Virus record (IMG/VR): IMGVR_UViG_3300027899_000001
Location: 248,001-312,000 of that record
DNA: 64,000 nucleotides
Strand: one strand, 5' to 3'
Positions within the stretch are counted from its first letter, which is position 1. Each line of letters starts with the position of its first letter. The notes beneath the pieces are model-generated. The model ran no database searches. It was given only the letters and a program-made list of their open reading frames with translations, and was not told the origin of the DNA. Below, in pieces: positions 8,919-56,752 of the stretch. Position numbers and translations under genes: made by a program.

Positions 8919-9290
8919 TTAATTTTCTTGAACAGGATAAGAATTTCTATTTTCCATTTCTTTAATTACTTTTACGTATGATTTTTCTTCAGTATCAGGA
9001 GTATATAATTTAACAAGTTTAACGGGTTTTGACATCGCAAATGCCATACCTAAATCGAAGTGAGATCCTTTACTATTTACATCCCAGAAAATATCAACTC
9101 TATCAGCTTGTTGCATAAATTCCATATGTTTTCTACAAATAAAATAGCCAGTTGGATCAGTTTGATCGACAGCGTATTTGGGATTATGAACAGTATGGCC
9201 TTCTCCTTTTAATAATTCAACATAAGTATCTATTTCTTGTTGTTGATCATCTGTTACACCTCTTACGGGACAAATTAAATGTATTTTCAT
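8919..9290 (-). CDS. Nucleoside 2-deoxyribosyltransferase / N-glycosidase-like protein (NDT/Rcl/MilB fold)
   Basis: 'IHLICPVRG', 'MQQADRV', 'SKGSHFDLGMAFAMSKPV' motifs. Confidence 0.6.
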   Translation of the reverse strand: MKIHLICPVRGVTDDQQQEIDTYVELLKGEGHTVHNPKYAVDQTDPTGYFICRKHMEFMQQADRVDIFWDVNSKGSHFDLGMAFAMSKPVKLVKLYTPDTEEKSYVKVIKEMENRNSYPVQEN

Positions 9291-9934
9291 AAGTTTTGTT
9301 TTTTAAGTTTCCAATATTTTTTTAATCCTTCTGTTATTTTTAATCTTGATTCTAATGATACTGTTTTATTTTTATTTCCTATACTTATTTTTTGTCTAGT
9401 TTCTATTGAAGAACTTTTCCCTTTATACCCTGAATTTTTTCCTTTTCTTTTTTTACTCATTTTTTCTTTTGTTTCAATAGATGCTATTTTACCAATATGT
9501 GATTTACTATTTTTAATTTTGTGTTCTTCTGTATGAGGTTTTTGCATTTTTTCTATTACTTCTATTCTTTTCATTGCTAATTTTGTTTTTTCGCTTATAT
9601 TTTTTCGTTGTTCTTCAGTCATGGGTATACTTTTAATTTTTTCAATAGCATATTCATAATCTTTTGCTGATATATTATATTTCAGTTTTTTACTAGATGC
9701 CATTCTAAGAAAGGCGTATGCAATTTTTCGATTTTCATTATAAATATATGTTAATAATTTATGACAAATAAAGTGTTCTTTAGCTGTTAATAAAACTTTA
9801 TTTTCTTCATTATCATTACCCCCTAAACATTTTGGTAATATATGATGATTTTCATAATATACACTTGTTTCTTTTAATCTATTTTCTGATTTTGAATTTT
9901 GAATTATAGATTTATATATTTTTTGATAATTCAT
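9287..9934 (-). mobile_element. Free-standing HNH homing endonuclease with NUMOD3-like repeats
   Basis: 'YYENHHILPKCLGG.DN.EN.V.LTAKEHF.CH.LL' followed by basic repeats. Confidence 0.8.
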
Positions 9935-11010: not shown

Positions 11011-11676
11011 TTATTTATCAGTTTTAAATTTGCAATTTATAAAATGATATCTTATCATATTTGGGCCTCTACCTATTAAATTACAATATGGGCATATTAG
11101 TGTTTTAAAATTTTTAGGTTTTCCTTTTCTTTTTAAAGACATTTCATCTTTAATTTTTTTAGCTCGTTCTATTCCAAATATTTCTTCATATGTTTTACCA
11201 GTATTTTCTTTTGCACGTTTAACAATTCCATACGATTGATAATTTTTACCATACATTCCATTTTTTTCTCCTTTTATATCATTAGAATGCTTAATTTTTC
11301 TTTCTTCGGTATAATTAGATTTTAATGTTTCAGACATTTTAATTAACGTTTCATTTGAATGTTTTTTTCCAAACATGCCATTATCTTCTCCAAAAAACGC
11401 ACCGCCTACTGCATCATTTTTTAAATTATAATATAATGGATTATTTTTGGCATCTACTTCTTTTAATGTTTTATCTTCTATTTCTCTAAATTTATTTCCT
11501 ATATAAAGTATTTTTCTTTCAAAATTATCAACTCCGTATTTTTTAATAGCATTTATAAACACAGTTCCTGATCCTATATAATTATCTTGAACATCTCCAA
11601 GATGTGATCCTATATATTTTTTTCCATTTATATTATTTGTCCATTCGTAGACAAACCCACAATCATCATTAATCAT
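11011..11676 (-). mobile_element. Free-standing GIY-YIG (Seg-like) homing endonuclease
   Basis: 'GFVYEWTNNINGKKYIGSH...YIGSG...' plus NUMOD3 'GMFGKKHS' repeats. Confidence 0.8.
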
Positions 11677-11682: not shown

Positions 11683-12384
11683 TTATACATTATATTTTAA
11701 AAAATCTTTTCGAGTTATACAGGCATTACCAGTTTCTATATAATGTTCAAGTAAATAAAATTGTTTTTCATATAAATGTAAACTTCCACTATTCCATATA
11801 ATTGCTCTTTTATTTATATGTAAATCATCACCCAATTTGTCTAAGATATATTTATGCCATGCGTAATCATTTCTATAGCCTGCCCATGCATCATTAGATC
11901 TCATTAACACATAAGAATATAAAATATTATTTCTAATCAAAAATTGAACAGCATAAGTACACATAAAATCATTTTTATTATTTTTATTATAATCTTCCCA
12001 CATAGTAGGACGATTATAAATCATTACACCTCGTCTTGAACTTTTTTGTTGTGTTAATTCTGTTAAACAATTTTTATATTGATAACCATTTTCTTTTGAA
12101 AAAACACACCAACCATAATTAGAATTTATAAATCCGCTTGGGTCTGCGACGTTTTTCCATATTGTAGGCGTATTTTTTATATCATTAACATTCAAAGATT
12201 GAGATAAATACCAATCAAGTTCATTTTTTACATATTCTTCATTAGTTTTTCCAAATATATATGATTCATCTGCTATAAATTGTGCACATATAAGATCAAT
12301 AACTTTTCCACCAAATTTATCAGTTTCAAATTTTTGTTCTTTATATTTTTTAACGAATTGATTTCTGATATCTTTTACTTTCAT
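11683..12384 (-). CDS. gp42: dCMP hydroxymethylase (T4 gp42-like, thymidylate synthase fold)
   Basis: 'INSNYGW', catalytic 'DFMCT', 'MRSND...GYRNDYAW', 'IIWNSGSLHLY' closely parallel T4 gp42 as recalled, including the dCMP-specifying Asp in RND. Confidence 0.85.
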   Translation of the reverse strand: MKVKDIRNQFVKKYKEQKFETDKFGGKVIDLICAQFIADESYIFGKTNEEYVKNELDWYLSQSLNVNDIKNTPTIWKNVADPSGFINSNYGWCVFSKENGYQYKNCLTELTQQKSSRRGVMIYNRPTMWEDYNKNNKNDFMCTYAVQFLIRNNILYSYVLMRSNDAWAGYRNDYAWHKYILDKLGDDLHINKRAIIWNSGSLHLYEKQFYLLEHYIETGNACITRKDFLKYNV

Positions 12385-13268: not shown

Positions 13269-13569
13269 TTTCTAAAGTATTATTTGTTTCATCTTGTTTT
13301 ACAGATGGCGAGCAATTAAGATACTCAAAAGCAAACATTTTACGAGTAAATTTTTTACTCCATCCAAAGTGTTTTGCTAATAAATTTACAGCCCATTCAT
13401 ACCATTCATCATGTTGAGCTTGAGTTACTTCATATTTTTTATAAAATGCTCGAAAATCTTTTTCACCCACCCATTCTTTTTCTACTTGAGCTATTGTTGT
13501 GTTATGATAAGGAACTAACCAACCATCTATTAAATCATCAAGAGTTGGCTCCTTTTTTCTTGTTCTCAT
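13243..13569 (-). CDS. Hypothetical protein
   Basis: 108 aa ORF with an ATGA overlap to the kinase. Confidence 0.55.
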   Translation of the reverse strand: MRTRKKEPTLDDLIDGWLVPYHNTTIAQVEKEWVGEKDFRAFYKKYEVTQAQHDEWYEWAVNLLAKHFGWSKKFTRKMFAFEYLNCSPSVKQDETNNTLENEKKVEIL

Positions 13570-14180
13570 TTTACAAATTGTATTACTTCTTTTAATATTT
13601 GTTTTTTAGATCTAAACGCAGTTTCTTCCATAACAACTACTTCATCTACTTTTAACATAAGTTTATTTTTTATTTTTGAAAAATCATGTGCTTCTTTAAA
13701 CAATTCAAGTTCTTTAGTTTTTTGTTCTAAATTTTGTGAAAAAGAATCGCCATCTTCTTTAAGTAAAAAGAAATAAGGATCTGCTGTTAAAGTAATAAGA
13801 TATATGTCAAATTTATTGTCAACATAAGGTAATTCAGTAATTTCCCAGTTCATTAATTTATTTTTCAAAAAATTACCATCTACGTTTCTAAACATTTGAC
13901 CATATACATATTCTCCTAAGTGTGATCTATTCCATATAATTATGTCTTCATAATAATTATATCTAGAATAGCAAAAAACATTTTTAATTTTATGAACTAA
14001 TTGAATTTCATTATCAAAACATTTAAATTGATAATCTAAAGTTTCTTCAACAGTCATGCCTTTAGGAGGTTTTCCAAAATGTCTTATTGTAATATTATTA
14101 TAATCAAACTTTTTACAAATACCTTCAATAAGAGTAGATTTACCAAGTCTATCTCCCCCCTCGATCACAATGAGTTTCAT
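13566..14180 (-). CDS. Deoxynucleoside monophosphate kinase (thymidylate-kinase-like P-loop)
   Basis: 'IVIEGGDRLGKST' P-loop; 'WNRSHLGEYVYG' DR-type motif. Confidence 0.8.
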   Translation of the reverse strand: MKLIVIEGGDRLGKSTLIEGICKKFDYNNITIRHFGKPPKGMTVEETLDYQFKCFDNEIQLVHKIKNVFCYSRYNYYEDIIIWNRSHLGEYVYGQMFRNVDGNFLKNKLMNWEITELPYVDNKFDIYLITLTADPYFFLLKEDGDSFSQNLEQKTKELELFKEAHDFSKIKNKLMLKVDEVVVMEETAFRSKKQILKEVIQFVK

Positions 14181-15069
14181 ATTTAATAAATTTTTTATTA
14201 TATCTTTCTGTAAATATTAATTTTTTATCTTCTATTAAATTTTTTATTTCTTCAAAAGATACTTGTTTTACACATTCAGTTAATTTATATTTAAAATTTT
14301 GTTGTTTACAAAATACCTCAGCGGCTTCTTTTTTTCTTGCAACTGTATCGCTATTCCATAATTTTTTAGGCTTAATTTCTATTAAAAATTTATCTTCAAT
14401 TAAAAAATCTGGATAATACGTTCTTTTGTTTCCGTTATAGTCAATATATTCAATTTTATATTTCTTTTTTTCAGCTCCTTCCCATTTTAAATTAAATCTT
14501 TCAATAACATATATCATATATGATAATTCTTTTAGAGATCTAAAAAACCACCCTTTATACCAACCACTCCAACCATTACCTGAACCCTGAGGAGAAGGCT
14601 TACCATACATATTATTTTTATCGCCTTTACGAGATTCACTATAATGTTGTCGTAATCGTTTACCTGTTTCTTCACCCCAGATTTGTTCAATGGTTTTTCC
14701 ATTTTGATCTAATGAGGCCCATCCATGCGAATATTTACCACCAAAATTTGCATTATTTTTTCCACTATTTGCTGTAGAATTTTTTTCTTTAGCAATAATA
14801 GCACCATCAATTCCTAAAATTTCTTCTAATGTTTTATTTTTTAAACTTTTATTATATTGAATTAATTTATTAGAATTTCGAATGCCTTCTTTATATTGCT
14901 GTTTATTCTTACAGCTTCTGCATAAATCTTTATAATATTTCTGAAATCCTAGTTGTTGATTTAATAAAGAAGAATCCCATATATTATCACATTCATCACA
15001 TTGAATTATTATTCGTTGTTTATTAGTTATTGTAGAATTTTTTAATTTAATTACTTCACTTAAAATCAT
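14149..15069 (-). mobile_element. Homing-endonuclease-like protein (Zn finger + NUMOD3-like repeats + TnsA-like PD-(D/E)xK nuclease)
   Basis: CDEC/CRSC; 'NNMYGK'; 'YYPDFLIEDKFLIEIKP'. Confidence 0.7.
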
Positions 15070-15397: not shown

Positions 15398-15811
15398 TTA
15401 TAACTTCATCAAGTGTAAAAGTTTTTCACTTGATATAGTTAACGGTTCATTAACTGTTTCTTCTGAATTTATTGTAGGCGGGTGAGTCATATATATTCCA
15501 TATTTATCAACTAATTTAAGAAAAGCATCTTCAATACAGTTTGAATCTAATGTTCCATTTTTTAAATTAACTAAAGTAGAATATGTACTACTATCTAAAT
15601 TAGTATATCCTTGTTGACTAAATGACGCATGAGTTCCTGGCATTCCAGGAGGACCTTGAATTCCTGTCATTCCCGGTTGACCCACAGGTCCTACACTTCC
15701 TGAAATTCCTTCAGTTAATAAACTTGCTCTTACGTAATTTTTCATCCATTGTTCTTTTTTATCATCAATTGCATTAGTTTTTAATCTCGGTTCAATACTT
15801 GTATATCCCAT
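15398..15811 (-). CDS. Hypothetical protein with a short collagen-like (G-X-Y)n tract
   Basis: GISGSVGPVGQPGMTGIQGPPGMPG. Confidence 0.6.
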   Translation of the reverse strand: MGYTSIEPRLKTNAIDDKKEQWMKNYVRASLLTEGISGSVGPVGQPGMTGIQGPPGMPGTHASFSQQGYTNLDSSTYSTLVNLKNGTLDSNCIEDAFLKLVDKYGIYMTHPPTINSEETVNEPLTISSEKLLHLMKL

Positions 15812-17022
15812 TAGAATAAAGATTTTGATTTATTATTTAATTCTTTTGTATTATCCTGCATATAAACAGATTGAGTAGATAATGTACGATTACCTTTTAT
15901 TATTTCAACTATTTCTCGAGTTACATCCTCACATGTGCAAACTGGAACATTTTGAGTTATTTTAGGATATTCCTTTATACTTTCAAGTTCATAATCATGA
16001 GGTAATCCCATCAGGTGCATATATTCTCTTATATTAATAAGTCTATCCTCTGAAGGATGAAGTGTTCTATTCATCATCTCAGATATCACCGCGTACACAT
16101 AATCTCTATCTAATCCAAGAACACGATATCCAAGTCTAAAATTTTTACCCATCTCAGTCTTTTTAATAACATGAGCAGTATTCTTTTTAACTATATTAGA
16201 CGCGTTCGGTAAAGTTTCAAGAAAATCTTTAAAATCATATAATAATCCCTGTCGTTTAAGATAATCGTATGAAGTTAAATGAGTTTTATATGTTTTATAA
16301 ATTTCATTTTTCCAATCAGTTCCATATATTTTTTTAAAGAATTTTGTTATTTCATATTCATTTACATCTGAATCTTCATTCATATATTTATCTTGATAAC
16401 TTGCTCTTTTAGGTATATCTTTTAAATATTTAGAAATATTTGGCATCGGTCTATTATATGAATGTAATATAGGAGCGTATTTACCTTTTAGAAATATTGC
16501 AAATGTACGAGGACGAAATTGGGGAATTCCGTGCTTTATCGTATTTGTTTTATAAAATGTAACTGCATAATCATTTGCTTCAGCAATTTTAATAAGATTA
16601 TTTCTTACATCTTCTCCACTGCCTGTATAAAGGCCCGGAGCATTTTCAAATGCATAAATAGTTGGACTTAAAAAATCTAAGATAAAGACTGCTGATTTAT
16701 ACATCCATTCATTTGGTTCTGCAGTTCCTCTTGAACCCTTAGGACGTTGTGCAGCTTGAGATAATCCAGAACAAGGTGGAACTGCTGTGACAAAATCAAG
16801 ATTTTTAGAAAATTCTTGTAGTTTATGAACTTCGTTATCATTCATATTATCTAATTGAATATAAGGCACATCGTGTCCTTTTTTCAAAAGATATCTTCTC
16901 AATAAATCGTCATTAGCTTTAAAAGGAGTATAGGATGTAATTGCCAGAGGAGGGCTTCCTATTATATTCATATTTCCAAGAGCAAAACCTCCAGCAAGAG
17001 GTATATGTGCTATGTAACGCAT
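15811..17022 (-). CDS. DNA cytosine-C5 methyltransferase homolog with a divergent motif I
   Basis: Motif IV 'PPCSGLS', VI 'ENAPG', VIII 'GIPQFRPRTF', IX 'RLINIREYMHLMGLP', X 'QNVP'. Motif I reads 'IPLAGG' instead of FxGxGG. Confidence 0.75.
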   Translation of the reverse strand: MRYIAHIPLAGGFALGNMNIIGSPPLAITSYTPFKANDDLLRRYLLKKGHDVPYIQLDNMNDNEVHKLQEFSKNLDFVTAVPPCSGLSQAAQRPKGSRGTAEPNEWMYKSAVFILDFLSPTIYAFENAPGLYTGSGEDVRNNLIKIAEANDYAVTFYKTNTIKHGIPQFRPRTFAIFLKGKYAPILHSYNRPMPNISKYLKDIPKRASYQDKYMNEDSDVNEYEITKFFKKIYGTDWKNEIYKTYKTHLTSYDYLKRQGLLYDFKDFLETLPNASNIVKKNTAHVIKKTEMGKNFRLGYRVLGLDRDYVYAVISEMMNRTLHPSEDRLINIREYMHLMGLPHDYELESIKEYPKITQNVPVCTCEDVTREIVEIIKGNRTLSTQSVYMQDNTKELNNKSKSLF

Positions 17023-17843: not shown

Positions 17844-18251
17844 TTAACCTCCTAAATTCATACCTCCTAAATCTGGGCCTTTTTCTGCTGCAGGTTCTGC
17901 TGGTACTGCAGCAGGTTCAGGCGATTTTTTCGCAGATTTAGGTTTTTCTGGTTCTTCTTTATCAATAAAATATTTTTTATATAAATTTATAGCAGCAGGC
18001 TCTTCAAAAATACCCTTTTTCATTCCTTCACTATAATATTTTTCATTCTCAGACAAATGTTGAAGAACAATTGTTTCAACTACTGATAAATCAGAAGAGT
18101 GTTCTTTTTCAACTTCCATTCCTACAAGAAATTCTCTTGAATCAACATCTTCAACAGTTAAACCGACTTTCTTTTGTCCTTTAAATATATCTTTATCGTT
18201 TGCTACTGATGATATAAATTCATTAAGACTTTCGTATACTAATTTTTTCAT
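17844..18251 (-). CDS. DUF5661-like protein with a capsid-targeting-like leader
   Basis: 'GMEVEKEH...I...HL.E...YY'; N-terminus MKKLVYESLNEF. Confidence 0.55.
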   Translation of the reverse strand: MKKLVYESLNEFISSVANDKDIFKGQKKVGLTVEDVDSREFLVGMEVEKEHSSDLSVVETIVLQHLSENEKYYSEGMKKGIFEEPAAINLYKKYFIDKEEPEKPKSAKKSPEPAAVPAEPAAEKGPDLGGMNLGG

Positions 18252-18263
18252 ATTATAGTTTAT

Positions 18264-18274
18264 TTTATATATTC
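18264..18274 (-). promoter_or_regulatory. Putative late promoter motif GAATATATAAA
   Basis: Exact 11-mer 13 nt upstream of the ATG at 18251. Confidence 0.5.
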
Positions 18275-18278
18275 ATAA

Positions 18279-18527
18279 TTAGGTTATAGATATAACTACT
18301 CCCCTGTCAGTAAATCTTCTTAATGCTTCAGTAACGTTTTCAATAGTAGCAGCGGGGTCATTCACTGTAATTGTTGCTTCGCTTTCTCTTGGATCTGGTC
18401 TATTACGTGGATCTGATCTATCAAATGGTTTATCAACTTGTGTAACATTTTGAAATTGTCTTTCTAGGGTGTGCGTAATTACATGAATCATTCCACGAGG
18501 GCCTTTAACTTCTACTTTAATTTCCAT
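18279..18527 (-). CDS. Hypothetical protein
   Basis: 82 aa ORF. Confidence 0.55.
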   Translation of the reverse strand: MEIKVEVKGPRGMIHVITHTLERQFQNVTQVDKPFDRSDPRNRPDPRESEATITVNDPAATIENVTEALRRFTDRGVVISIT

Positions 18528-18565
18528 AATTTTAATTTATTTTAGTTTATTTTAATATATATTCA

Positions 18566-18883
18566 TTAAATTTCATCTTCTGGTAAAATCTCTAAATCTT
18601 CTCCTTCAAGAAATGAATAAACATATTCATCTATAAATTGTTTTTGATATTCCGCAGGAGTATTATCAAGAATTGTATTTACAAGGTTATTTACGCCTTC
18701 TCTATTATAAAGTTCTTGTATTAAATAAGCAAATCCTTCATAATAAGTATCAACTTCTATATTATATCTTTTTAATTTTTCTGTAAGATATCTATTTCTA
18801 TTAAAACCTATTTTCATATCTTTAATAGGATCTGAATGTTCTTCAAATTTTTCATATAAAGATTCTTTAATAAGTTTTTTCAT
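18566..18883 (-). CDS. 'ESDPI-leader' family protein
   Basis: N-terminus MKKLIKESLYEKFEEHSDPIKDMKIG. Confidence 0.65.
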   Translation of the reverse strand: MKKLIKESLYEKFEEHSDPIKDMKIGFNRNRYLTEKLKRYNIEVDTYYEGFAYLIQELYNREGVNNLVNTILDNTPAEYQKQFIDEYVYSFLEGEDLEILPEDEI

Positions 18884-18891
18884 ATTAATAT

Positions 18892-19755
18892 TTATTTTTG
18901 ATCATCACCTTCCATAGCTCTAATTTCACGTCTATATTTCTTTTCATGTTCATATTCATACTCATGATAATCTGTAAAATACGGAGGTTTAGAAAGCTGT
19001 CTTCTATAATTTGCGCGGGGTACTATGTCTTTAAATGTAGGCGTTATAGTAAATCTTACTATTCGTGGTAATGTTACATCATCTTTTTTAAAATAATGTC
19101 TAATTAATCGCGGTTTAATTAAAATGGAAGAAAATCCCAAGTTATTAATAATATCTTTAACATATTTACCTAACTTATCAATTTCATTTTTCGGTAAGTT
19201 TTTAATTTTAGGATTATTAAACCAGAAATCTATATATCCATTACGTACATATACTGTAAAAATATAATGATTCTTATCAGCGTTTCCAAATAATTTAACT
19301 AAATCTTTGTATCTTGATTTTAATCCTATGCCCATATCATATATCGCATCATCACTTTCAATAAATTTTTCATCTATATGTTTTTGGGGTTTTATACGTT
19401 TTCCTGTATCTGGGTGTCTTTTAGGATATCCTAATTTTAATAATTTATTTCTTACACCCATATAAATATATGCAAAAGGATTACCAGTATGTCTGTTTTC
19501 CATTTTAGTATAATTCTTAGCGTATTCATCTAATATATTATAATATTTCCAATTAAATGCAGTATTTTCATCTTCAGGAAAAATGATATCATCAGGGATT
19601 TTATCTGTACCTAAAATAACAGTTAAATATTTAAAAAACCAATCTGCAGCGTCATCTTCATCTTTAAATCTACGTTTCGCATAAATTCCTATTCCTAAGT
19701 CATGAATGGGATCCGACTCTTCTATAAATTTTTCGTTAATATATTGTGCTCGCAT
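18892..19755 (-). CDS. 'ESDPI-leader' family protein, two tandem units
   Basis: N-terminal INEKFIEESDPIHDLGIG and internal IDEKFIESDDAIYDMGIG. Confidence 0.7.
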   Translation of the reverse strand: MRAQYINEKFIEESDPIHDLGIGIYAKRRFKDEDDAADWFFKYLTVILGTDKIPDDIIFPEDENTAFNWKYYNILDEYAKNYTKMENRHTGNPFAYIYMGVRNKLLKLGYPKRHPDTGKRIKPQKHIDEKFIESDDAIYDMGIGLKSRYKDLVKLFGNADKNHYIFTVYVRNGYIDFWFNNPKIKNLPKNEIDKLGKYVKDIINNLGFSSILIKPRLIRHYFKKDDVTLPRIVRFTITPTFKDIVPRANYRRQLSKPPYFTDYHEYEYEHEKKYRREIRAMEGDDQK

Positions 19756-19946: not shown

Positions 19947-20966
19947 ATGAAAGAATTCAAAAAAGAAAAGAATTTATTTATATGTGAAGAATGCCAACGC
20001 ACATTTGTTAAAATCGATGGGTTAAGTAAACATATAAGACTTAATCACTATTCTCAAAAAACATATTATGATAAATGGCTAAAAGAAAATGATGAAAATA
20101 CTTGTAAAATTTGTAAAAAAGAAACAACATTTATAGGATTAGGAAAAGGTTATAAAAATTGTTGTTCATCTGACTGCACTAAAAAATTTAGAACACATAA
20201 AATTCAAGCAACTTTATTACTTAGATATGGTGTAAATTCTCCTACTAAAGATAAAACTATTAGAGAAAAAGTAAATAAAACGATGATAAAAAAATATGGG
20301 CATAAATGCCCTATGAAAAATGAAAAAATACAAAAAGAAATAAAACAAAATAATTTAAAAAAATTGGAAGTAGAATATCCATTTCAGTCTTTAAAAATTC
20401 AAGAAAAAATAATTATATCTAATTTAGAAAATTTCGGAGTAAAAAATACGTTTCAACGAATAGATGTAAAAAATAAAATAAAAGAAACTTGTATGCAAAG
20501 ATATGGAGTTGAAAATCCAAATAATAATAAAAAAGTTAGAGATAAAATAGAAAAAACTTGTATAGATAAATATGGAGTTAAAAATCCATCACAGAATAAA
20601 GAAGTGCATGATAAACAACAAAAAAACGCGTGTTATTCAAAAAAATATAAAAATACTATTATAAACTATAGAGCATCTTATGAATATGATTTTTTAGAAA
20701 AATTTTACCCAGTATATTCTGATATAGTTAATGGCCCAACAATAAAATATCAATATAAAAATGAATCCAGATTATATTTTCCAGATTTTTACATTCCATC
20801 TTTAAATCTTATCGTTGAAATAAAAAATTCTTATCTTTTAAAAAAAGATAAAGAAAAAATAGAAGCAAAGAAAAAATATACTATTCTTAATGGGTATAAT
20901 TATTTAATAATTACTAATAAAGATTATTCTACATTTTCTTCATATCTTAAAATTTCTCCAGTATAA
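19947..20966 (+). mobile_element. Homing-endonuclease-like protein (C2H2 finger, YGV.NP repeats, C-terminal PD-(D/E)xK nuclease)
   Basis: 'FICEECQR...HIRLNH'; repeated 'YGVxNP'; 'YFPDFYIPSLNLIVEIK'. Confidence 0.7.
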
Positions 20967-22099
20967 CTTTTAAATTCATATACATGATCTTTATGCGATA
21001 TAATGTTATCACAGACTTCAATTTTTCCTAAATGAGAATCTACAATAAATGTTGGACACGCGTAACCACTCGTCCAGCCTCTCAATGCTGAGATAATCTG
21101 AAGTCCTTTATTAATAGTAGTTCTAAAATGACTTGTACCTGCAACAAGATCGCATGCATATATATAATATGGTCTAACTCTAATTGTAAGAAGACTATTC
21201 ATAAGCTTTTTCATAATTTGTGGGTCATCGTTAACGCCTTTGAGTAATACTGTTTGAGAACCTAAAGGAATTCCTGCATTCGCAAGCTTTTCACACGCTT
21301 GTTTAACTTCTGAAGTTATTTCATCGGGATGAGAGAAATGAATACTTATGAATAAAGGATGATATTTCTTTAAGATATTAGTTAACTCTGGCGTAATTCT
21401 TTGAGGTAACACAACAGGAACTTTAGTTCCAATTCTTAAGAACTCAACGTGTTTTATTTCTTTAATTTCTTTAAGAAGATATTCTATACTATCGTCATTC
21501 ATAGTTAAAGGATCTCCTCCAGATAATAACACATCTCGTATCTCAGTATGTTCTCTAATATACTGAAGCGCCTTTTCCCACGCTTTCTTAGGAATTCGTT
21601 CTCTATTTATGAGTCTACTTCTTGTACAGTATCGACAATTTGAAGAACAAAAGTCCGTGGTTAGAAATAATACACGATCTGGATATCTATGAACTATACA
21701 TTCCACAGGACTTTGATGTTCTTCGTTCAGCGAGTCGTTTTTCTCATTTTCAGTTACGTGAAGTTCGTTATTGGTTGGAATAACGCACTTTCCGATTCCT
21801 TCTGAAAGAGAAGTGATTGTACTTGCATAATATGGAGTAATTCTTAATGGTAAATTTATATTCTTGGATAATTCATAATTTGAATCTCCAAATATACGAC
21901 TCAATTCTTCATATGTAGTTATACTGTTACGTATCTGCCAATGCCAATCATTCCAATTAGTATCAGATACATCTGAATAAAATCTATTTTTAAAAGATTG
22001 AGTTTTTTCGGAGATGATAAGAGGGGGTTCTTCAGTATCAACGATAATCTCCTGAGCTGGTTGATACTGGTTTTTAGACGAATCTATTTGTTGTTCCAT
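20924..22099 (-). CDS. kamA: KamA-family radical SAM lysine 2,3-aminomutase
   Basis: 'WNDWHWQIRN', 'VHRYPDRVLF...CSSNCRYCTR', 'LLSGGDPL', PLP-Lys 'LLKGVND', 'VRPYY'. Confidence 0.85.
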   Translation of the reverse strand: MEQQIDSSKNQYQPAQEIIVDTEEPPLIISEKTQSFKNRFYSDVSDTNWNDWHWQIRNSITTYEELSRIFGDSNYELSKNINLPLRITPYYASTITSLSEGIGKCVIPTNNELHVTENEKNDSLNEEHQSPVECIVHRYPDRVLFLTTDFCSSNCRYCTRSRLINRERIPKKAWEKALQYIREHTEIRDVLLSGGDPLTMNDDSIEYLLKEIKEIKHVEFLRIGTKVPVVLPQRITPELTNILKKYHPLFISIHFSHPDEITSEVKQACEKLANAGIPLGSQTVLLKGVNDDPQIMKKLMNSLLTIRVRPYYIYACDLVAGTSHFRTTINKGLQIISALRGWTSGYACPTFIVDSHLGKIEVCDNIISHKDHVYEFKSYTGEILRYEENVE

Positions 22100-23126: not shown

Positions 23127-23816
23127 TTGGAAATCATGAATCATCAAAAAGTCTATGAATCTATAATTCAGAGAGCAAAATCTGAAAATAGAATTAAACT
23201 TAATAGAAATAATGAAAATTATATTTATTATGAAAATCATCATATTTTGCCCAAATGCTTAGGTGGAAATAATGATAAAGATAATTTGGTTTTATTAACA
23301 GCAAAGGAACATTATGTCTGTCATAAATTACTTACATATATTTATAAAGAAAACGCAAAAATATACGGTGCTTTTTTCTATATGTCATTTAATAAAAAAT
23401 ATGACAAATTTTTATCAGCTCGAGATTATGCTTACGCAATAGAATTAAATACTATCGCACATATTAATAAAAAACAATCGTTAGAAACAAAAGAAAAAAG
23501 AAGAAAATCAATGTTAGGTAAAAACAAAGGAAAAAAAATGAAAAAAGAATTTGGCGAAAACATTTCTAAACGTTTAAAAGGAAACATTCCTTGGAATAAA
23601 GGAAAACCCGGGTGTTTTTCAAATGATACTATTAATAAAATGTCAATAGCTGCAATAGGAGTAAAAAATTCATTAGAATCAAATGAAAAAAATAGGCAAT
23701 CTCATATAGGAAAAACTACATGGAATAAAGGATTAACAAAAGAAATTGATGAACGGGTTTTAAAATGTTCACTTAAAATTTCTAAAACTCTTAAAAATAA
23801 AAATTTATTAAATTAA
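23127..23816 (+). mobile_element. Free-standing HNH homing endonuclease
   Basis: 'YYENHHILPKCLGGNNDKDNLVLLTAKEHYVCHKLL'; paralog of 9287-9934; 'PWNKG' repeats. Confidence 0.8.
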
Positions 23817-24517
23817 GACTGGCCCGGACCCTTTATAGCAATTCCGCTAATTGCAGGGTTGGATCTATCATTAGGTTGCGAAAATTGTTTTACCCTATTC
23901 GCATCAGTTATATCGGCAGCATTTTGCTGAAGACCTATACTCTCTTCAACTTCTCCTTTGGCTGCTACTGCTTTACCATCTGTAACTTTATTAAGTTCTT
24001 CTGGAGCCATTGTTCCAAATCCTGAACGTTCTTCCCAATAATCTTTTCCATAATCAATTGTAAGTTGTTCTCCAGCTTTTATAGTTCTTGCTGCGATAAA
24101 ATACATTTGACGATTATCTTTATTATAAGCAAATGTGATATTTGGTTGAGGTGAATGCCCATATAAACTGCCATATCCAAGCACAATACCGTATTGCATT
24201 TTATTTTTATCGATTTCAAAAATATAATCTTTTAATCTTGGAACTGCTTTTGCTTCAAGACCCACAAAAATAATAGGCGCAATTTCAACTATTTCTCCTT
24301 TAGCATATTGTGTTTTAGCTAACACAAGATATCCTCCATTCTTTTTCTTAGAATATTCTACACGATTAACATTGAACACTTCTTTACGCGCTGTCAAGAA
24401 ACCCCCTTTATCAGCAATATGTGAAGGTTTTACTACGATATCTGTTTTTTCAAACGGATTGTAAAATTCTTCATCTAGTTTAGCAAATTGATCAAATGTT
24501 TTAATTTTATATTTCAT
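23813..24517 (-). CDS. SET-domain protein methyltransferase
   Basis: 'KNGGYLVLAK...KGEIVE', 'GSLYGHSPQPN' (NHS-like), 'AARTIKAGEQLTIDYG'. Confidence 0.8.
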   Translation of the reverse strand: MKYKIKTFDQFAKLDEEFYNPFEKTDIVVKPSHIADKGGFLTARKEVFNVNRVEYSKKKNGGYLVLAKTQYAKGEIVEIAPIIFVGLEAKAVPRLKDYIFEIDKNKMQYGIVLGYGSLYGHSPQPNITFAYNKDNRQMYFIAARTIKAGEQLTIDYGKDYWEERSGFGTMAPEELNKVTDGKAVAAKGEVEESIGLQQNAADITDANRVKQFSQPNDRSNPAISGIAIKGPGQS

Positions 24518-28396: not shown

Positions 28397-29203
28397 ATGA
28401 GCAAACACTTTGACGAAATTATCATAATTGGTCTTGAGAGGTGTCAAAACAGAATTGACATGGTTGAATCTCAACTTAAAAATTTTAATCTTCCCTATCG
28501 TATCTTTCCCGCATTTGATGGACAGCAAATAGCAAATCCGTCAATGAAAACAATGACACGTGCTCCTCTTAAAGCATTTTCTAATTTTAATCCCAGTAGA
28601 CCTAAATATCTTCCGGGTATGTTATGTTGTGGGTTATCTCATATAGCAGCAATGAAACATGCTCAGATGATGAATCTTAAAGGAATACTTTTACTTGAAG
28701 ATGATGTCATATTATCTCCTGATTTTGCAGATAGATTAAAATTGATTGAAGAAGTTCCAGACGATGCAGATTTAATTTATATTGGAGCTATTGTGACAAG
28801 CGATCATTTAAGTAAGAAATATAAAATATCTGAACATGTATGGGATGCTCAGAAAATGAGTCTTTACGCAACTCATTCCTTTATAGTCACGCGTAAAGGA
28901 TATACACCAGTTATTAAAAAAATGATGGAATGCGAAGATACATGCGATTCATTATTAGTTGAAGGTGTTCAAAAACAGGAAATTAAAGCATATGCAGTAA
29001 TTCCATTTTGTACATATCAAATAGAAGGAACATCAGAAATTGATGGTAAAAAGAAATCATTAAATCATACAAAAACTTTATATTCTCCGGATGAAAATTT
29101 TAGTAACATGGGAGGCTATGATCGTAAAACTAAAATGAATGTTAATGATATAACAAGTGAATATAGCTACGAAAAAAGTGCAAAACCTAAATCTTTATTC
29201 TAA
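28397..29203 (+). CDS. Glycosyltransferase, GT25-like
   Basis: 'IIGLER...R', 'AFDG', 'LCCGLSH', 'LLLEDD'; ends KPKSLF. Confidence 0.75.
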   Translation: MSKHFDEIIIIGLERCQNRIDMVESQLKNFNLPYRIFPAFDGQQIANPSMKTMTRAPLKAFSNFNPSRPKYLPGMLCCGLSHIAAMKHAQMMNLKGILLLEDDVILSPDFADRLKLIEEVPDDADLIYIGAIVTSDHLSKKYKISEHVWDAQKMSLYATHSFIVTRKGYTPVIKKMMECEDTCDSLLVEGVQKQEIKAYAVIPFCTYQIEGTSEIDGKKKSLNHTKTLYSPDENFSNMGGYDRKTKMNVNDITSEYSYEKSAKPKSLF

Positions 29204-29337: not shown

Positions 29338-29561
29338 ATGCACAAGAATATATCGATTATCTTAAAGATTTTGCTGAAAAAATAGATGATGAAACTCTTA
29401 AATCAGTAGGAATTAAATCTATTGCAATTATACAAGAAGTTCTTGCAAAAGATCCAATGAAACCAAAATTATTGGTAAAAAAATTAGATGAAACACAATA
29501 TAGTGTATATGGTAGAGATGAAATTTTAACAGAATTGAACAGAATATTTAGAGACGTATGA
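29334..29561 (+). CDS. Hypothetical protein
   Basis: 75 aa ORF. Confidence 0.55.
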   Translation: MNAQEYIDYLKDFAEKIDDETLKSVGIKSIAIIQEVLAKDPMKPKLLVKKLDETQYSVYGRDEILTELNRIFRDV

Positions 29562-30802
29562 AAATAGCTTTAGTAATGGGAAGAGGCGCAGAAGGCGCCG
29601 GAATTCAACGATATGTTATTGAATTATCGACATTTTTATCTAAAAAACAAATTGAACATATTATCTATATCATGGATGATAAAAAATGGGGACGTGGAGG
29701 ATTTCAAACATTTCCTCAAAAACCATCTATGATTACAAAAGATAACATTGATAATTTTTCAGATGTATTGAATAAATTTGATTATGTGTTTATCAATAGT
29801 GTTCCAAGTATTAAACATTCAGAATGGGCTATTGATGGATTTCTTAAAATGGTCAAGGGTATAAAAACCAAAAAGATTATATTTCAAAATGATCATAAAA
29901 TAGCTTCTATTCATAGAAATGCTAATTTTATTGAGATGTGTGGTCTTTGTGATGGTATAGTATCTCATAGTATTACATCTCCTTTCTATAATAAACTTGT
30001 AGATGTATATGGAGGCGCTGTTAGATCTAAATTTATTCAACTTCAAGTAGGATTTAATTTCTCTCAGTTAGCAAAATATCGTAAAGAAGATCATGTTAAA
30101 AAAATTACATATCTTGGTAGATATGCTACATTTAAACAACCTGACAGATTATTTGCTTTTCTTCCTTATGCTAAAGATAATGATATATTACTTGAAATGA
30201 AAGGTGTTGAAAGATCACTTGGCGCTTTGAATATCTTTTATGATGATATCGAAAATAAAATTCCCAAACATGATATCATTCAGGTTGATAAAAATTTCTT
30301 TAAAACTGGAATGTCAGCTTTAGATGCTGATAGAAGTTATGAACATGTTTATATATATGGTCCTTATGATTATGTAGATGGAATGGAAACATTAAGCAAA
30401 TCATTAGTAGGCGCAGATTTTTATCATCTTAATGCAGATGCATATGGAGATAATTTTGAATATGCTCAATGTGAAATAATTGGAGTAGGAACAGTTCCTA
30501 TGTTTGATTATCATTGGGCAGAAAATTGTTACATATATGAAAATGGTAAGAAAACTGATAAAAGATTTGTAGAACTTGATACTTATGGACTTTTTGTTAA
30601 AAAAGATTTAACAAATGTAAAGGAAATAGTAGAAAAAATTAACAATATATATTCTGATAAGAAACTTCATAAACAATATTTAGATTGTAGTTTTGAAGTT
30701 ACACGAAATCATTGTGATAGTGAATTTATATTTCAAAATCTTATAGATGGTATTTCAGGATTAGAAAAAGCAAAACAAATAAAAACTAAACCCTTATTTT
30801 AA
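29558..30802 (+). CDS. agt: DNA alpha-glucosyltransferase, T4 AGT-like
   Basis: 'MGRGAEGAGI', 'INSVP', 'NDH...S.HRN', 'SHS', 'GRYATFK', 'GVERS', 'EYAQCE...GTVP.F' parallel T4 AGT as recalled; ends KTKPLF. Confidence 0.8.
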   Translation: MKIALVMGRGAEGAGIQRYVIELSTFLSKKQIEHIIYIMDDKKWGRGGFQTFPQKPSMITKDNIDNFSDVLNKFDYVFINSVPSIKHSEWAIDGFLKMVKGIKTKKIIFQNDHKIASIHRNANFIEMCGLCDGIVSHSITSPFYNKLVDVYGGAVRSKFIQLQVGFNFSQLAKYRKEDHVKKITYLGRYATFKQPDRLFAFLPYAKDNDILLEMKGVERSLGALNIFYDDIENKIPKHDIIQVDKNFFKTGMSALDADRSYEHVYIYGPYDYVDGMETLSKSLVGADFYHLNADAYGDNFEYAQCEIIGVGTVPMFDYHWAENCYIYENGKKTDKRFVELDTYGLFVKKDLTNVKEIVEKINNIYSDKKLHKQYLDCSFEVTRNHCDSEFIFQNLIDGISGLEKAKQIKTKPLF

Positions 30803-30803: not shown

Positions 30804-31730
30804 ATGGCACGACCTAAAAAAGTAAAAGTAGAAGAACCTGCTAAAATAGCAGTAGAAGAAAAAGAAACTCTAAATGATATTATAATTGAAAAAAGTAACA
30901 TTTATCCATTAGGAGAAATACAGATTGTAGATAATCCGGTGTTTGAAGTTCCATATTTGGAATTTAATTATAATAAAGAGTCTGACACCATTTCTCTAGA
31001 AAAACAAAAACAAACAATACAAGTTAGCACTTCTAGAGTAGGCACGCATATAACTTCAGAACAAGCTAAAGAATTTAAAGATAAATTTAATTTAGACTTA
31101 AACGAAGTTGTTAAAAAAGCATTGATAAATGAAGCTTCTCAACAATTAACAAAACATTATATATCAAAAATTGGAGAAGCTGCTACAGAAAATTATATTA
31201 AAGAATATACCCGTTGGGATAAGTTTAAAGTATGGGCATATAAACTTGTTAAAAAACAATATAGAAAAAAAATAAAAATTCAAACTTCTAAAGAGTTAAA
31301 TTATAGAATTTTAAAAGAAGCCAATAATATTGCAGCAAATAGTAGATGGGGAAGTGGAAATTTTGTTATATGTAGTTTAAAAACTGCTATGCTTTTACAG
31401 AGTTCATCTAATTTTGTATATGCTACTTTAAATAAACCTGTATCTACAAATGGCAGTATTTATCCAATTGGAACTATTGCAGGCGTGACTATTTATGTAG
31501 ATCCTTATATGTTATATCAAGATACTAATGTATACATAGGAAGAAGAAATAATACAAATCAGCCTGGCATAAAACTATTTTTTAAAGAATCTTATAGTTA
31601 TATGCAAACGGAAGGTCTTGGTGCTCCAAAGGTTATATTAGAAATGAGATACGCAATCGCAGGCGTTGGTAAAAATTATAAAGACCAATATAGAAAATTT
31701 GAATACATTGATAAAATCATAAACAAATGA
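30804..31730 (+). CDS. Truncated paralog of the major capsid protein
   Basis: 'NGSIYPIGTIAGVTIYVDPYMLYQDTNVYIGR...TEGLGAPKVILEMRYA' aligns with 'NGSLYPLGTIAGMTLYVDPNMLYSDTRVLVGR...TEGTGAPKVIIKTRYA' in 56803-58575. Confidence 0.8.
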   Translation: MARPKKVKVEEPAKIAVEEKETLNDIIIEKSNIYPLGEIQIVDNPVFEVPYLEFNYNKESDTISLEKQKQTIQVSTSRVGTHITSEQAKEFKDKFNLDLNEVVKKALINEASQQLTKHYISKIGEAATENYIKEYTRWDKFKVWAYKLVKKQYRKKIKIQTSKELNYRILKEANNIAANSRWGSGNFVICSLKTAMLLQSSSNFVYATLNKPVSTNGSIYPIGTIAGVTIYVDPYMLYQDTNVYIGRRNNTNQPGIKLFFKESYSYMQTEGLGAPKVILEMRYAIAGVGKNYKDQYRKFEYIDKIINK

Positions 31731-56270: not shown

Positions 56271-56272
56271 TT

Positions 56273-56710
56273 TTAAACTGCTGAAACTATAAGACCATCT
56301 ACTATATTAAACACCGAAGCATCTCCAAAATTTATTGATCCAGTAAGACCCGCAGGTGCTGTCCCTTGAACGCCTTGAATACCTTGTATTCCTTGTGCAC
56401 CTTGATCACCAGTTATGCCCTGAATTGCTTGAATTCCTTGTACTCCTTGAGCACCCGTTATTCCTTGAATACCTTGAATACCTTGAGCTCCAGTTATGCC
56501 CTGAATTGCTTGAATTCCTTGTACTCCTTGAGCACCTGTTATTCCTTGAATACCTTGAATACCTTGAGCTCCTTGTGAACCTGTTATTCCTTGTAATCCC
56601 TGAGTACCTTGAATACCAGTTATTCCTTGTGCGCCTTGAGCCATTACATATCCATCTAATAGTGTGCTAACATCTCTAGTTAAATCAGCATTAGTTTTTT
56701 CACGTATCAT
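56273..56710 (-). CDS. Collagen-like (G-X-Q/T) protein, probable head/virion fibre component
   Basis: About 30 Gly-X-Y triplets; directly downstream of the MCP with its own late-promoter motif. Confidence 0.75.
56409..56570 (-). repeat. Tandem 81-bp duplication within the collagen tract
   Basis: 56409-56489 vs 56490-56570, one mismatch by eye (CCCGT/CCTGT). Confidence 0.85.
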
Positions 56711-56739
56711 GTTTTATAGTTTATTTTATTTTTTTATAT

Positions 56740-56750: not shown

Positions 56751-56752
56751 AT

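What the first reader, a model, noticed from the sequence alone, without database searches (positions are those of the whole stretch)
15811..17022. C5-methyltransferase homolog with an altered cofactor motif in a phage that also makes hmC
Seen: catalytic PC, EN and RxR motifs are intact, but motif I is HIPLAGGF. Logic: fully hmC-substituted DNA leaves no free C5, so the co-presence with gp42 needs an explanation. Inference: substitution is partial and this enzyme caps residual C, or it transfers a non-methyl group from a SAM analogue, or it acts on hmC. Its KSKSLF tail suggests coupling to replication.
Basis: partly seen in the sequence, partly recalled or inferred. Interest (0 to 1): 0.6.

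Follow-up and report, generated by a model that had tools for sequence, protein, structure and literature searches.

The report
Clamp-tethered C5-methyltransferase-like enzyme of hmC phages
A jumbo freshwater phage that makes hydroxymethylcytosine also carries a cytosine-C5 methyltransferase look-alike with a rewired cofactor pocket; it belongs to a large phage-only family that always travels with the hydroxymethylcytosine genes and appears to ride the replication clamp, but what it does to DNA is not known.

Summary
ORF 15811-17022(-) has a full C5-MTase fold. The catalytic Cys, Glu and RxR are intact. Motif I is IPLAGGF instead of FxGxGG, and the ribose-binding Glu of motif II is Ser.

These changes are invariant in 175 relatives, so this is a selected variant and not decay. 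The family is large (412 clusters at E<=1e-30) and found only on phage-type contigs.

In 23 of 26 long records it co-occurs with a thymidylate-synthase homologue, usually 1-7 kb away; every neighbouring copy checked (44 loci) carries the dCMP-specifying Asp. A Tmk-like kinase and a DNA glycosyltransferase are also usual neighbours. Here these are a T4 gp42 homologue (E 3e-73), a kinase and a T4 alpha-glucosyltransferase homologue.

The KSKSLF tail recurs on this phage's DNA polymerase and glycosyltransferases. It co-varies with the polymerase and glycosyltransferase tails across lineages. I identified the phage's gp45-like clamp by fold; the tail-clamp docking test gave weak support.

Best reading (about 0.4): a replisome-tethered enzyme that modifies cytosines left without hmC. 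A reaction on hmC itself, or a non-methyl donor, is not excluded. Carboxy-SAM chemistry is not supported. An ordinary restriction-modification methylase is unlikely.

The parts
15811..17022 (-). C5-methyltransferase-like ORF (403 aa, P0001)
   Evidence: ORF list and translation. PF00145 80.8 bits. AF2 model pLDDT 90. VIA-align Z 25.6 to M.HaeIII and 24.9 to DNMT1.
16984..17004 (-). Altered motif I, IPLAGGF (canonical FxGxGG)
   Evidence: Re-translated. HHalign to canonical phage C5-MTases maps I7 to F and L9 to G. L9 is found in 172 of 172 and G11/G12 are invariant.
16930..16935 (-). Ser30-Tyr31 at the place of motif II Glu-aromatic (SAM ribose and adenine contacts)
   Evidence: HHalign maps S30 to the E of 'NEF' and Y31 to F. 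S/T in 171 of 173, never D/E; aromatic in 172. The roles of Glu and Phe are described for CmoX and HhaI in PMC12783734.
16759..16779 (-). Motif IV, PPCSGLS, with catalytic Cys84
   Evidence: C84 in 175 of 175. The residue after Cys is S/A/N where HhaI has Gln.
16636..16647 (-). Motif VI, ENAP (canonical ENV)
   Evidence: E126 and N127 in 175 of 175, A128 in 173 of 175.
16507..16521 (-). Motif VIII, QFRPR (RxR)
   Evidence: R170 and R172 in 175 of 175. Aligned to HhaI QKRER.
15943..15954 (-). Motif X, QNVP (canonical GN[AS]V)
   Evidence: Q357 in 175 of 175, N358 in 172 of 175. Aligned to HaeIII GNAVPV.
15814..15831 (-). C-terminal tail KSKSLF, candidate sliding-clamp docking peptide
   Evidence: LF is invariant in the close clade. 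The same tail type is on the PolB C-part, the alpha-GT homologue, a GT25 and others in this genome: 13 LF ends against 2.4 expected, P 1.5e-6. Tails co-vary across lineages. Docking to the clamp gave weak support. The tail is disordered in the model, residues 395-403 below pLDDT 50.
13566..14180 (-). Tmk-like nucleotide kinase, probable hm-dCMP kinase
   Evidence: PF02223 29.7 bits, phrog_761. Homologues lie within 10 kb of the MT-like gene in 34-35 loci.
11683..12384 (-). dCMP hydroxymethylase (T4 gp42 homologue)
   Evidence: E 3e-73 to 1B49, with Cys and Asp179 kept. 50% identity to T4 gp42.
29558..30802 (+). DNA alpha-glucosyltransferase homologue with tail ..KTKPLF
   Evidence: PF11440 AGT 44.4 bits. 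tblastn with T4 a-gt gives 7e-21 over the full length. Tail.
28397..29203 (+). GT25 glycosyltransferase with tail ..KPKSLF
   Evidence: PF01755 52.9 bits. Tail.

Best explanation
The ORF encodes a catalytically competent DNA cytosine-C5 transferase of a phage-only family. The family is a standing component of the pre-replicative hydroxymethylcytosine pathway: a dCMP-specific TS homologue, a nucleotide kinase and a DNA glycosyltransferase. Its short C-terminal tail docks on the phage's own gp45-like sliding clamp, as do the tails of the DNA polymerase and the hmC glycosyltransferases, so the enzyme scans newly made DNA behind the fork. The most likely chemistry is Cys84 attack on C6 of a flipped cytosine whose C5 is still free, meaning dC incorporated in place of hm-dC. 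The enzyme would then transfer a methyl group from SAM held in a remodelled pocket, where Ser30 and the family-specific F34/N37 insert replace the usual Glu. Together with glycosylation of hmC, this would leave no unsubstituted cytosine in the virion DNA. Shown: the fold, the intact catalytic residues, the family-wide altered cofactor motifs, the gene linkage, the shared and co-varying tails, and the existence of the clamp. Inferred: clamp binding in vivo, SAM as donor, residual C as substrate, and low sequence specificity.
For: Fold and catalytic motifs; invariance in 175 sequences. Linkage to the hmC pathway: 23 of 26 long records carry a divergent TS homologue, mostly 1-7 kb away. Within 10 kb, TS is found in 44 loci, the kinase in 35 and a putative GT in 32+12. 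All 44 TS homologues have Asp at the position that specifies cytosine, while the phage's own ThyA has Asn. Background: only about 2% of phage records have a gp42-like gene (1005 of 50,697). Not a cellular R-M gene: 2 hits in 185,579 species genomes, both MAG contigs that carry the same phage module. The TRD is alignable across the family. Free C is plausible here: no gp56-type dCTPase, MazG or PRA-PH in the complete 405-kb genome. One distant family member is fused to a zf-CXXC domain, a reader of unmethylated CpG. Clamp coupling. Docking score 0.40 against a best control of 0.02, graded weak support. In the marine T4-like group the clamp gene lies directly downstream of the MT-like gene.
Against: No assay exists, so the donor and the substrate are inferred. 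The two most conserved SAM contacts of the superfamily are changed in every member: the first Gly of FxGxG is Leu, and the motif II Glu is Ser/Thr. Residues that flank C5 are smaller (PCQ to PCS/A, ENV to ENA). That would also fit a bulkier substrate or donor. 12 of 27 related records encode a gp56-like or PRA-PH pyrophosphatase, often next to the gene. If these are dCTPases, little free C should remain there, yet the enzyme is fully conserved. A Nudix hydrolase next to the clamp loader could serve as a dCTPase in this phage. The score is below NCBIfam's dcm cut-off (52.9 against 100.65).
Confidence: 0.4

Rival explanations
1. The enzyme acts on 5-hydroxymethylcytosine, or its glycoside, in DNA. 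Cys84 adds to C6, the 5-CH2-OH is activated as an exocyclic methylene, and a nucleophile bound in the remodelled 'cofactor' pocket is attached. The result would be a new hypermodified cytosine, formed in competition with or complementary to glycosylation.
For: The association with dCMP-specific TS homologues is strict; no exception is seen in near-complete genomes. The enzyme is conserved even where a gp56-like pyrophosphatase is adjacent. The canonical SAM contacts are lost family-wide and the residues next to C5 are smaller. Ordinary C5-MTases are known to derivatise 5hmC with thiols and to add or remove aldehydes at C5 (Liutkeviciute 2009 and 2011, as cited in PMC7176277).
Against: No natural enzyme of this kind is known. 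Motif I GG, an acidic residue after strand 3 (D58 in 152 of 175), the aromatic at the adenine site and the motif X Asn are all kept, which fits an adenosyl cofactor. The clamp-tethered glycosyltransferases already use hmC. One family member carries a CXXC domain, which points to unmodified C.
Confidence: 0.22
2. The enzyme modifies residual unmodified cytosine, but with a group other than methyl. The donor would be a SAM analogue or another one-carbon source, for example DNA-level hydroxymethylation that gives the same hmC handle.
For: The cofactor pocket is altered. CmoX sets a precedent for a phage C5-MTase homologue that uses carboxy-SAM (PMC12783734; structural Z 24.0 to 8yf3).
Against: The CmoX signature Arg is absent: N358 is present in 172 of 175. 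There is no CmoA in the genome and no donor-synthesis gene among the conserved neighbours. No precedent exists for folate in this fold.
Confidence: 0.12
3. It is an ordinary sequence-specific 5mC methyltransferase kept for anti-restriction, and its place beside the hmC genes is only clustering of DNA-metabolism genes.
For: Homology to PF00145. Database annotations read 'site-specific DNA-cytosine methylase'.
Against: The family is absent from cellular genomes and R-M contexts. The linkage to Asp-type TS homologues holds across lineages only 30% identical and with different gene orders. The TRD is conserved. The tails are shared with the replisome. The cofactor motifs are invariantly non-canonical.
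Confidence: 0.1
4. It is not an enzyme of phage DNA modification. It could be a clamp-bound base-flipping or reader protein, or an enzyme aimed at RNA or at host DNA.
For: The cofactor motifs deviate. Dnmt2-type enzymes with all the DNA-MTase motifs methylate tRNA (EhMeth appears among the structural matches).
Against: Cys, Glu and both Arg are invariant in 175 sequences, which argues for catalysis on a flipped cytosine. The clamp tail places the protein on replicating phage DNA.
Confidence: 0.06

Closest known systems
Prokaryotic and phage DNA (cytosine-5) methyltransferases (M.HhaI, M.HaeIII; Pfam PF00145)
   Same: The whole fold matches (Z 24-25.6, 278-298 residues aligned). The motif IV Cys, motif VI Glu-Asn, motif VIII RxR, motif IX and the motif X Asn are shared.
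   Different: Motif I is IPLxGG, not FxGxGG. The motif II Glu is Ser/Thr. PCQ becomes PCS/A, ENV becomes ENA, GN becomes QN. There is a family-specific insert with invariant F34 and N37, a conserved TRD, a C-terminal clamp tail and no R-M partner. The family is found only on phage-type contigs and is tied to an hmC pathway.
DNMT1 family (DNMT1, MET1, CMT/ZMET2, DIM-2), with DNMT1 recruited to PCNA
   Same: These catalytic domains give the longest structural alignments (335-345 residues, Z 24-25). The concept is the same: a C5-MTase tethered to the sliding clamp behind the fork (own knowledge of the DNMT1 PIP box). A CXXC fusion occurs in one family member.
   Different: There are no regulatory N-terminal domains. 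The docking peptide is C-terminal and of the phage gp45 type. The genome is one where most C is expected to be hmC, and there is no maintenance logic.
CmoX, the DNA cytosine C5-carboxymethyltransferase of Synechococcus phage S-B43 (PDB 8yf3; PMC12783734)
   Same: It is a phage C5-MTase homologue repurposed by changes in the cofactor pocket and feeding a hypermodification pathway. Structural Z is 24.0.
   Different: CmoX keeps the Glu and Phe contacts to the SAM ribose and adenine and has Arg350 in place of HhaI Asn304, with a CmoA partner. Here the Glu is lost, the Asn is kept, and there is no CmoA.
T4 hydroxymethylcytosine pathway (gp42, gp1, gp56, alpha- and beta-glucosyltransferases)
   Same: The window has a gp42 homologue (50% identity), a nucleotide kinase and an alpha-GT homologue. 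Relatives carry a putative beta-GT-like gene.
   Different: T-even phages have no C5-MTase homologue: among 1005 phage records with gp42-like genes, only XG4 and the S-TIM5 group carry it. This phage lacks a gp56-type dCTPase. The T4 a-gt has no clamp tail.
Phage MT-TET-glycosyltransferase post-replicative pathway (PMC8256090; 10.1101/2023.12.21.572611)
   Same: A phage-specific C5-MTase sits in a gene cluster that ends in glycosylated hmC.
   Different: In that pathway the MTase makes 5mC, which a TET oxidises to hmC. Here hmC comes from a TS homologue at the nucleotide level. No Tet_JBP gene was detected in 27 records, although the control for that search was silent.
gp45-binding C-terminal peptides of T4 gp43, gp55 and DNA ligase (for example PDB 6drt)
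   Same: The peptide is a short C-terminal hydrophobic motif. Marine relatives carry T4-like S/T-L-[DE]-[DE]-F-F tails, next to T4 ..SLDFLFG and ..SLDFLYEAND. The phage clamp's best structural match is T4 gp45.
   Different: In this clade the motif is basic: [KR]x[KR]xLF-COOH. To my knowledge, clamp-docking tails on DNA-modifying enzymes (MTase-like, glycosyltransferases) have not been described.

Membership tests
DNA (cytosine-5) methyltransferase, PF00145 / Dcm superfamily | Two-domain C5-MTase fold | tested here: met
   AF2 pLDDT 90. Z 25.6, rmsd 3.2 A and 278 aligned to 1dct; Z 24.1 to HhaI.
DNA (cytosine-5) methyltransferase, PF00145 / Dcm superfamily | Catalytic motif IV Pro-Cys, motif VI Glu-Asn, motif VIII Arg-x-Arg | tested here: met
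   C84, E126, N127, R170 and R172 are invariant in 175 sequences. They align to HhaI and HaeIII.
DNA (cytosine-5) methyltransferase, PF00145 / Dcm superfamily | Motif I FxGxG(G) SAM loop | tested here: not met
   [IV]-P-L-x-G-G. The first Gly is Leu in 172 of 172 and the Phe is Ile/Val. The Pfam, NCBIfam and PDB-profile alignments start only at residue 60-65.
DNA (cytosine-5) methyltransferase, PF00145 / Dcm superfamily | Motif II acidic residue that binds the SAM ribose hydroxyls | tested here: not met
   Ser/Thr in 171 of 173, never Asp/Glu.
DNA (cytosine-5) methyltransferase, PF00145 / Dcm superfamily | Curated score cut-offs | tested here: inconclusive
   Pfam 80.8 against 22 is met. NCBIfam TIGR00675 52.9 against 100.65 is not met.
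DNA (cytosine-5) methyltransferase, PF00145 / Dcm superfamily | SAM binding and methyl transfer to C5 | not testable with these tools
   This needs biochemistry or a ligand co-fold.
CmoX-type C5-carboxymethyltransferase | Arg at the HhaI Asn304 position that binds the carboxymethyl group; SPPC motif | tested here: not met
   N358 in 172 of 175; the motif is [PC]PPC, not SPPC. Criteria from PMC12783734.
CmoX-type C5-carboxymethyltransferase | [quoted passage not shown] | tested here: not met
   No TIGR00740 match in the complete genome; the control rang in 10 genomes.
Restriction-modification methyltransferase | Occurrence in cellular genomes beside a restriction endonuclease; hypervariable TRD | tested here: not met
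   Only 2 hits in 185,579 species genomes, both phage-type contigs in MAGs. The TRD is alignable with 7 columns at 90% or more.
Phage MT-TET (5mYOX) hmC pathway methyltransferase | Partner Tet/JBP dioxygenase | tested here: inconclusive
   No PF12851 match in 27 records, but the control search rang nowhere.
Sliding-clamp client proteins (gp45 or PCNA interacting peptide) | Terminal hydrophobic docking motif shared with the cognate polymerase | tested here: met
   PolB C-part ..YARSLF, MT-like ..KSKSLF, AGT ..KTKPLF. Same-contig co-variation, for example L043 MT ..HVNTLF with PolB ..HVNTLF, and L040 MT ..TLESFI with GT ..SLEDFFS.
Sliding-clamp client proteins (gp45 or PCNA interacting peptide) | Physical binding to the clamp | tested here: inconclusive
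   The clamp was identified (P0269). The complex prediction verdict was weak support: score 0.40, best of 3 controls 0.02. The mark was reached by 58 of 80 solved complexes and 2 of 110 mismatched pairs, but at 0.60 or under by only 7 of those 80 and by both mismatches. Runs agree in at least 64% of contacts; partner pLDDT is at least 38.

The most novel reading that the evidence does not exclude
The family is a natural 'hmC transferase'. It would be a C5-MTase-fold enzyme that no longer methylates. Instead it would use covalent C6 catalysis on hydroxymethylcytosine, or on residual cytosine with a non-SAM donor, in nascent DNA while riding the sliding clamp. The product would be a cytosine hypermodification not yet described. 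This would be the DNA-level counterpart of the atypical reactions that Klimasauskas and colleagues forced on M.HhaI and M.SssI in vitro.
Probability: 0.25. Interest if true: 0.92.

Novelty: new variant of a known kind. Interest (0 to 1): 0.72.

Why it matters
Phage DNA hypermodification is a main source of new nucleic-acid chemistry and of epigenomics enzymes such as the glucosyltransferases, TET, 5mC-selective deaminases and CmoX. This analysis defines a large family of C5-MTase homologues found only on phage-type contigs, which I could not find described in the searched literature. Their cofactor pocket is changed in every member, and they are genetically locked to pre-replicative hmC synthesis, a setting where a C5 methylase should have little to do.

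Either outcome would be informative. One is a quality-control methylase that closes the gaps left by nucleotide-level replacement. The other is an enzyme that works on hmC. The co-varying clamp tails on the MT-like enzyme and the DNA glycosyltransferases also suggest that phages couple base modification physically to the replisome, as eukaryotes do with DNMT1 and PCNA. Cultured carriers exist (Pseudoalteromonas phage XG4, cyanophage S-TIM5), so the question can be tested directly.

Tried and rejected
- **Nucleotide search of the region against phages:** no match.
- **Sequence searches for the clamp:** phrog_223, PF02768, PF09116, PF02916 and phmmer with T4 gp45/44/62 all failed. HHalign of the clamp candidate against T4 gp45 gave only 1.4% probability, and a PDB profile search found nothing. 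The clamp was recognised only after folding.
- **dCTP-removing enzymes in the genome:** phrog_173, MazG, PRA-PH and tblastn or phmmer with T4 gp56 found none. A Nudix hydrolase seen by eye was not characterised.
- **Tet_JBP:** no match, but the control was silent, so this is uninformative.
- **CmoA:** absent.
- **Fusion partners of four long relatives:** only one gave a domain, zf-CXXC; the others had no Pfam match, and their contigs were too short to give context.
- **c3_415:** no PDB or PHROG match and only a weak GT10 hit. The beta-GT link rests on language-model features and is a lead only.
- **Sequencing runs:** one freshwater metagenome run, probably the source, is held only as contigs. 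Read laying was therefore not used, and no read-level evidence on modification or expression exists.
- **Literature:** seven searches found no paper on a C5-MTase homologue linked to dCMP hydroxymethylase. The library lacks most subscription journals.
- **Residue-level inspection of the cofactor pocket:** not possible, because model coordinates are not exposed.
Full report
**1. What is there**

The window is bases 248001-312000 of a complete, terminally repeated 405,016-bp virus record of about 27% GC. The only sequencing run that holds it is a freshwater metagenome. The finding's ORF is exact: 15811-17022 on the minus strand, 403 aa. It is the only PF00145 match in the genome.

Pfam scores it at 80.8 bits, but only from residue 60 onward. 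NCBIfam's dcm model behaves the same way and stays under its cut-off. A 28-sequence profile against PDB sequences also aligns only from residue 65 or so.

An AlphaFold2 model built on that alignment is confident (pLDDT 90). It superposes over its whole length, N-terminal half included, on C5-methyltransferases:
- M.HaeIII: Z 25.6
- DNMT1: Z 24.9
- DIM-2 and ZMET2: Z 24.4
- M.HhaI: Z 24.1
- CmoX: Z 24.0

**2. The motifs**

I made a profile-profile alignment of the family against four canonical phage C5-MTases. It maps I7-P-L9-A-G-G onto F-x-G-x-G-G. It maps S30-Y31 onto the Glu-aromatic pair of motif II. In HhaI and CmoX that pair holds the ribose hydroxyls and stacks on the adenine of the cofactor (PMC12783734).

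In 175 distinct family sequences:
- L9 is invariant.
- S30 is Ser/Thr in 171 of 173 and never acidic.
- Y31 is always aromatic.
- C84, E126, N127, R170, R172 and Q357 are invariant.
- ENV is ENA in 173 of 175.
- The residue after the catalytic Cys is Ser, Ala or Asn, where HhaI has Gln.
- The motif X Asn is kept in 172 of 175.

So the machinery for covalent attack on a flipped cytosine is under strong selection, and the cofactor pocket is changed in a fixed way. This is neither a decaying gene nor a peculiarity of this one phage.

**3. The family and its company**

The family has at least 254 close homologues and 79 viral loci. It has 412 representative clusters at E<=1e-30 among 1.84 billion proteins. 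In 185,579 prokaryotic species genomes it appears twice, both times on MAG contigs that carry the same phage gene set. Atlas neighbours with recorded taxa are viral.

Of 26 long records that hold a family member, 23 also hold a divergent thymidylate-synthase homologue. The three without one are 16-65% complete fragments. In most records the two genes lie 1-7 kb apart.

Conserved neighbours within 10 kb of the gene:
- TS homologue: 44 loci
- Tmk-like kinase: 35 loci
- 415-aa protein whose nearest named relatives by language-model features are T4 beta-glucosyltransferases: 32 loci
- T4 alpha-glucosyltransferase homologue: 12 loci
- NDP-sugar genes: NTP transferase in 32 loci, HAD phosphatase in 20, epimerase/dehydratase in 25

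Every one of the 44 neighbouring TS homologues has Asp at the position of T4 gp42 Asp179 / E. coli ThyA Asn177, the residue that switches the substrate from dUMP to dCMP. The phage's own canonical ThyA has Asn there (rule as used in 10.1101/2024.12.05.627091).

In this window the TS homologue is a 50-54% identical copy of T4 dCMP hydroxymethylase. For comparison, only about 2% of sequenced phages have such a gene. Of those, only XG4 and the S-TIM5 group carry the MT-like gene.

**4. Is cytosine fully replaced here?**

The genome has a dCMP deaminase. It has an alpha-glucosyltransferase homologue. It also has a 27-kb island of glycosyltransferases and deoxy/amino/branched-sugar enzymes. I found no gp56-type dCTPase, MazG or PRA-PH. 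A Nudix hydrolase next to the clamp loader is an untested candidate.

Incomplete replacement is thus plausible for this phage. However, 9 of 27 related records have a gp56-like pyrophosphatase and 3 more have a PRA-PH protein, in several cases directly beside the MT-like gene. Their substrate is unknown. If they are dCTPases, 'no dCTPase, hence free C' cannot be the general reason for the family's existence.

**5. The tail**

In this genome 13 of 513 ORFs end in Leu-Phe, against 2.4 expected (P 1.5e-6). They include:
- the C-terminal part of the split family-B DNA polymerase (..YARSLF)
- the alpha-glucosyltransferase homologue (..KTKPLF)
- a GT25 (..KPKSLF) and a GT8
- a 156-aa protein in the replication cluster
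- a 390-aa protein near the clamp loader (..GTALF), FEN/RNase H-like judged only from its N-terminal sequence
- the MT-like protein (..KSKSLF)

Across lineages the tails change together on the same contig:
- basic x-LF in this clade;
- acidic S/T-L-[DE]-[DE]-F-F in marine relatives, for example MT ..TLESFI with GT ..SLEDFFS;
- MT ..HVNTLF with PolB ..HVNTLF;
- MT ..IDLFENQ with PolB ..VDMFSF.

The acidic form resembles the gp45-binding ends of T4 gp43 (..SLDFLFG) and gp55 (..SLDFLYEAND).

No clamp was detectable by sequence. A 259-aa acidic protein in the replication cluster (G000:C1:96718-97497) is 22% identical to the conserved gene that lies immediately downstream of the MT-like gene in the marine T4-like group. 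It folds confidently (pLDDT 90.3), and its best structural match is T4 gp45, followed by PCNAs and beta clamps.

Co-folding this clamp with residues 368-403 of the MT-like protein gave the verdict 'weak support':
- score 0.40, best of three controls 0.02;
- the mark was reached by 58 of 80 solved complexes and 2 of 110 mismatched pairs, but at 0.60 or under by only 7 of those 80 and by both mismatches that passed;
- runs agree in at least 64% of contacts;
- partner pLDDT is at least 38.

Taken with the comparative evidence, I rate clamp tethering at about 0.7.

**6. What it does**

I commit to a replisome-tethered cytosine-C5 transferase that works on nascent phage DNA as part of the hmC programme. 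The most economical substrate is cytosine whose C5 is still free, with methyl as the product. Together with clamp-tethered glycosylation of hmC, this would leave no plain cytosine. A conserved TRD and the lack of any R-M context fit a context-poor scanning enzyme. A CXXC fusion in one distant member points to unmodified C. I give this 0.4.

The fixed loss of the two hallmark SAM contacts, together with the smaller residues around C5, keeps open a reaction on hmC itself. C5-MTases can be made to do that in vitro. A non-methyl donor also stays open. Carboxy-SAM is the one alternative I could test, and it fails: Asn rather than Arg at the key position, and no CmoA. An ordinary anti-restriction methylase is unlikely, for the reasons given in paragraph 3.

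**7. Limits**

No biochemical or read-level evidence bears on the modification state of this DNA. The residue equivalences in the cofactor pocket come from a profile alignment and from secondary structure, not from inspected coordinates. Record fragments limit the absence calls. The literature search covers open-access papers and bioRxiv only.

Noticed in passing
window 28397-56270 (+ strand): A 27-kb island of about 30 co-oriented genes for glycan synthesis. It holds a DNA alpha-glucosyltransferase homologue, three GT25, and GT2, GT8, GT10 (fucosyltransferase-like) and GT47 enzymes. It also holds an NDP-hexose 2,3-dehydratase, a DegT aminotransferase, a GFO oxidoreductase, a sugar C-methyltransferase, a GDP-mannose 4,6-dehydratase and an FAD oxidoreductase. 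Three of the glycosyltransferases end in the clamp-type LF tail, which suggests an elaborate glycan built on hmC DNA rather than on a cell surface.
   Followed up: partly
window 30804-31730 (+): A 308-aa ORF matches the T4 major capsid protein family (PF07068 Gp23, 77.7 bits, profile positions 126-348). It sits between the alpha-glucosyltransferase homologue and further glycosyltransferases, which is an odd place for a capsid-protein fragment.
   Followed up: no
window 20924-22099 (-) and 23813-24517 (-): A KamA-family radical-SAM aminomutase (TIGR00238 340.8 bits; lysine 2,3-aminomutase model 412 bits, below its cut-off) and a SET-domain protein. Both are conserved neighbours of the MT-like gene in this clade, in 9 and 17 loci, and also on the two MAG contigs. 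Their role is unknown.
   Followed up: partly
window 9287-9934, 11011-11676, 14149-15069 (-), 19947-20966, 47805-48566 (+): Homing-endonuclease-like genes (NUMOD3, SegE GIY-YIG, TnsA-like/DUF7487) are scattered between the hydroxymethylase, kinase and MT-like genes and inside the glycan island. They account for the variable spacing of the module between relatives.
   Followed up: no
window 15398-15811 (-): A 137-aa protein with a short collagen-like Gly-X-Y run. Its start overlaps the stop of the MT-like ORF by one base, which suggests translational coupling.
   Followed up: no
G000:C1:142056-143531 and 92925-94094 (outside the window): The family-B DNA polymerase is split into two ORFs about 48 kb apart. 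T4 gp43 residues 106-509 and 557-752 match them separately. The same split is seen in the marine relatives.
   Followed up: partly
G000:C1:96718-97497, 374259-375215, 375454-376050 (outside the window): A sliding clamp recognisable only by fold. An RFC/gp44-like clamp loader lies 278 kb away from it. A Nudix hydrolase lies directly upstream of the loader and might act on dCTP.
   Followed up: partly
loci L030, L031, L035, L043, L068: Some relatives carry two paralogous MT-like genes on one contig, both with clamp-type tails. They may have complementary targets, as the alpha- and beta-glucosyltransferases of T4 do.
   Followed up: no
window 17844-19755 (-) and many places in G000 (e.g. 78162-81550, 137557-138033, 145622-147784): A multi-copy gene family whose products begin with a shared N-terminal motif, M-K/R-x-x-[YV]-[IV]-x-E-K-F-x-E-E-S-D-P-[IV]-H-D (DUF5661-like). 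It is dispersed through the genome.
   Followed up: no
window 56000-60000: G+C rises to 34-35% against about 26% elsewhere, over two large minus-strand ORFs (56803-58575 and 58658-61003). They were not annotated.
   Followed up: no
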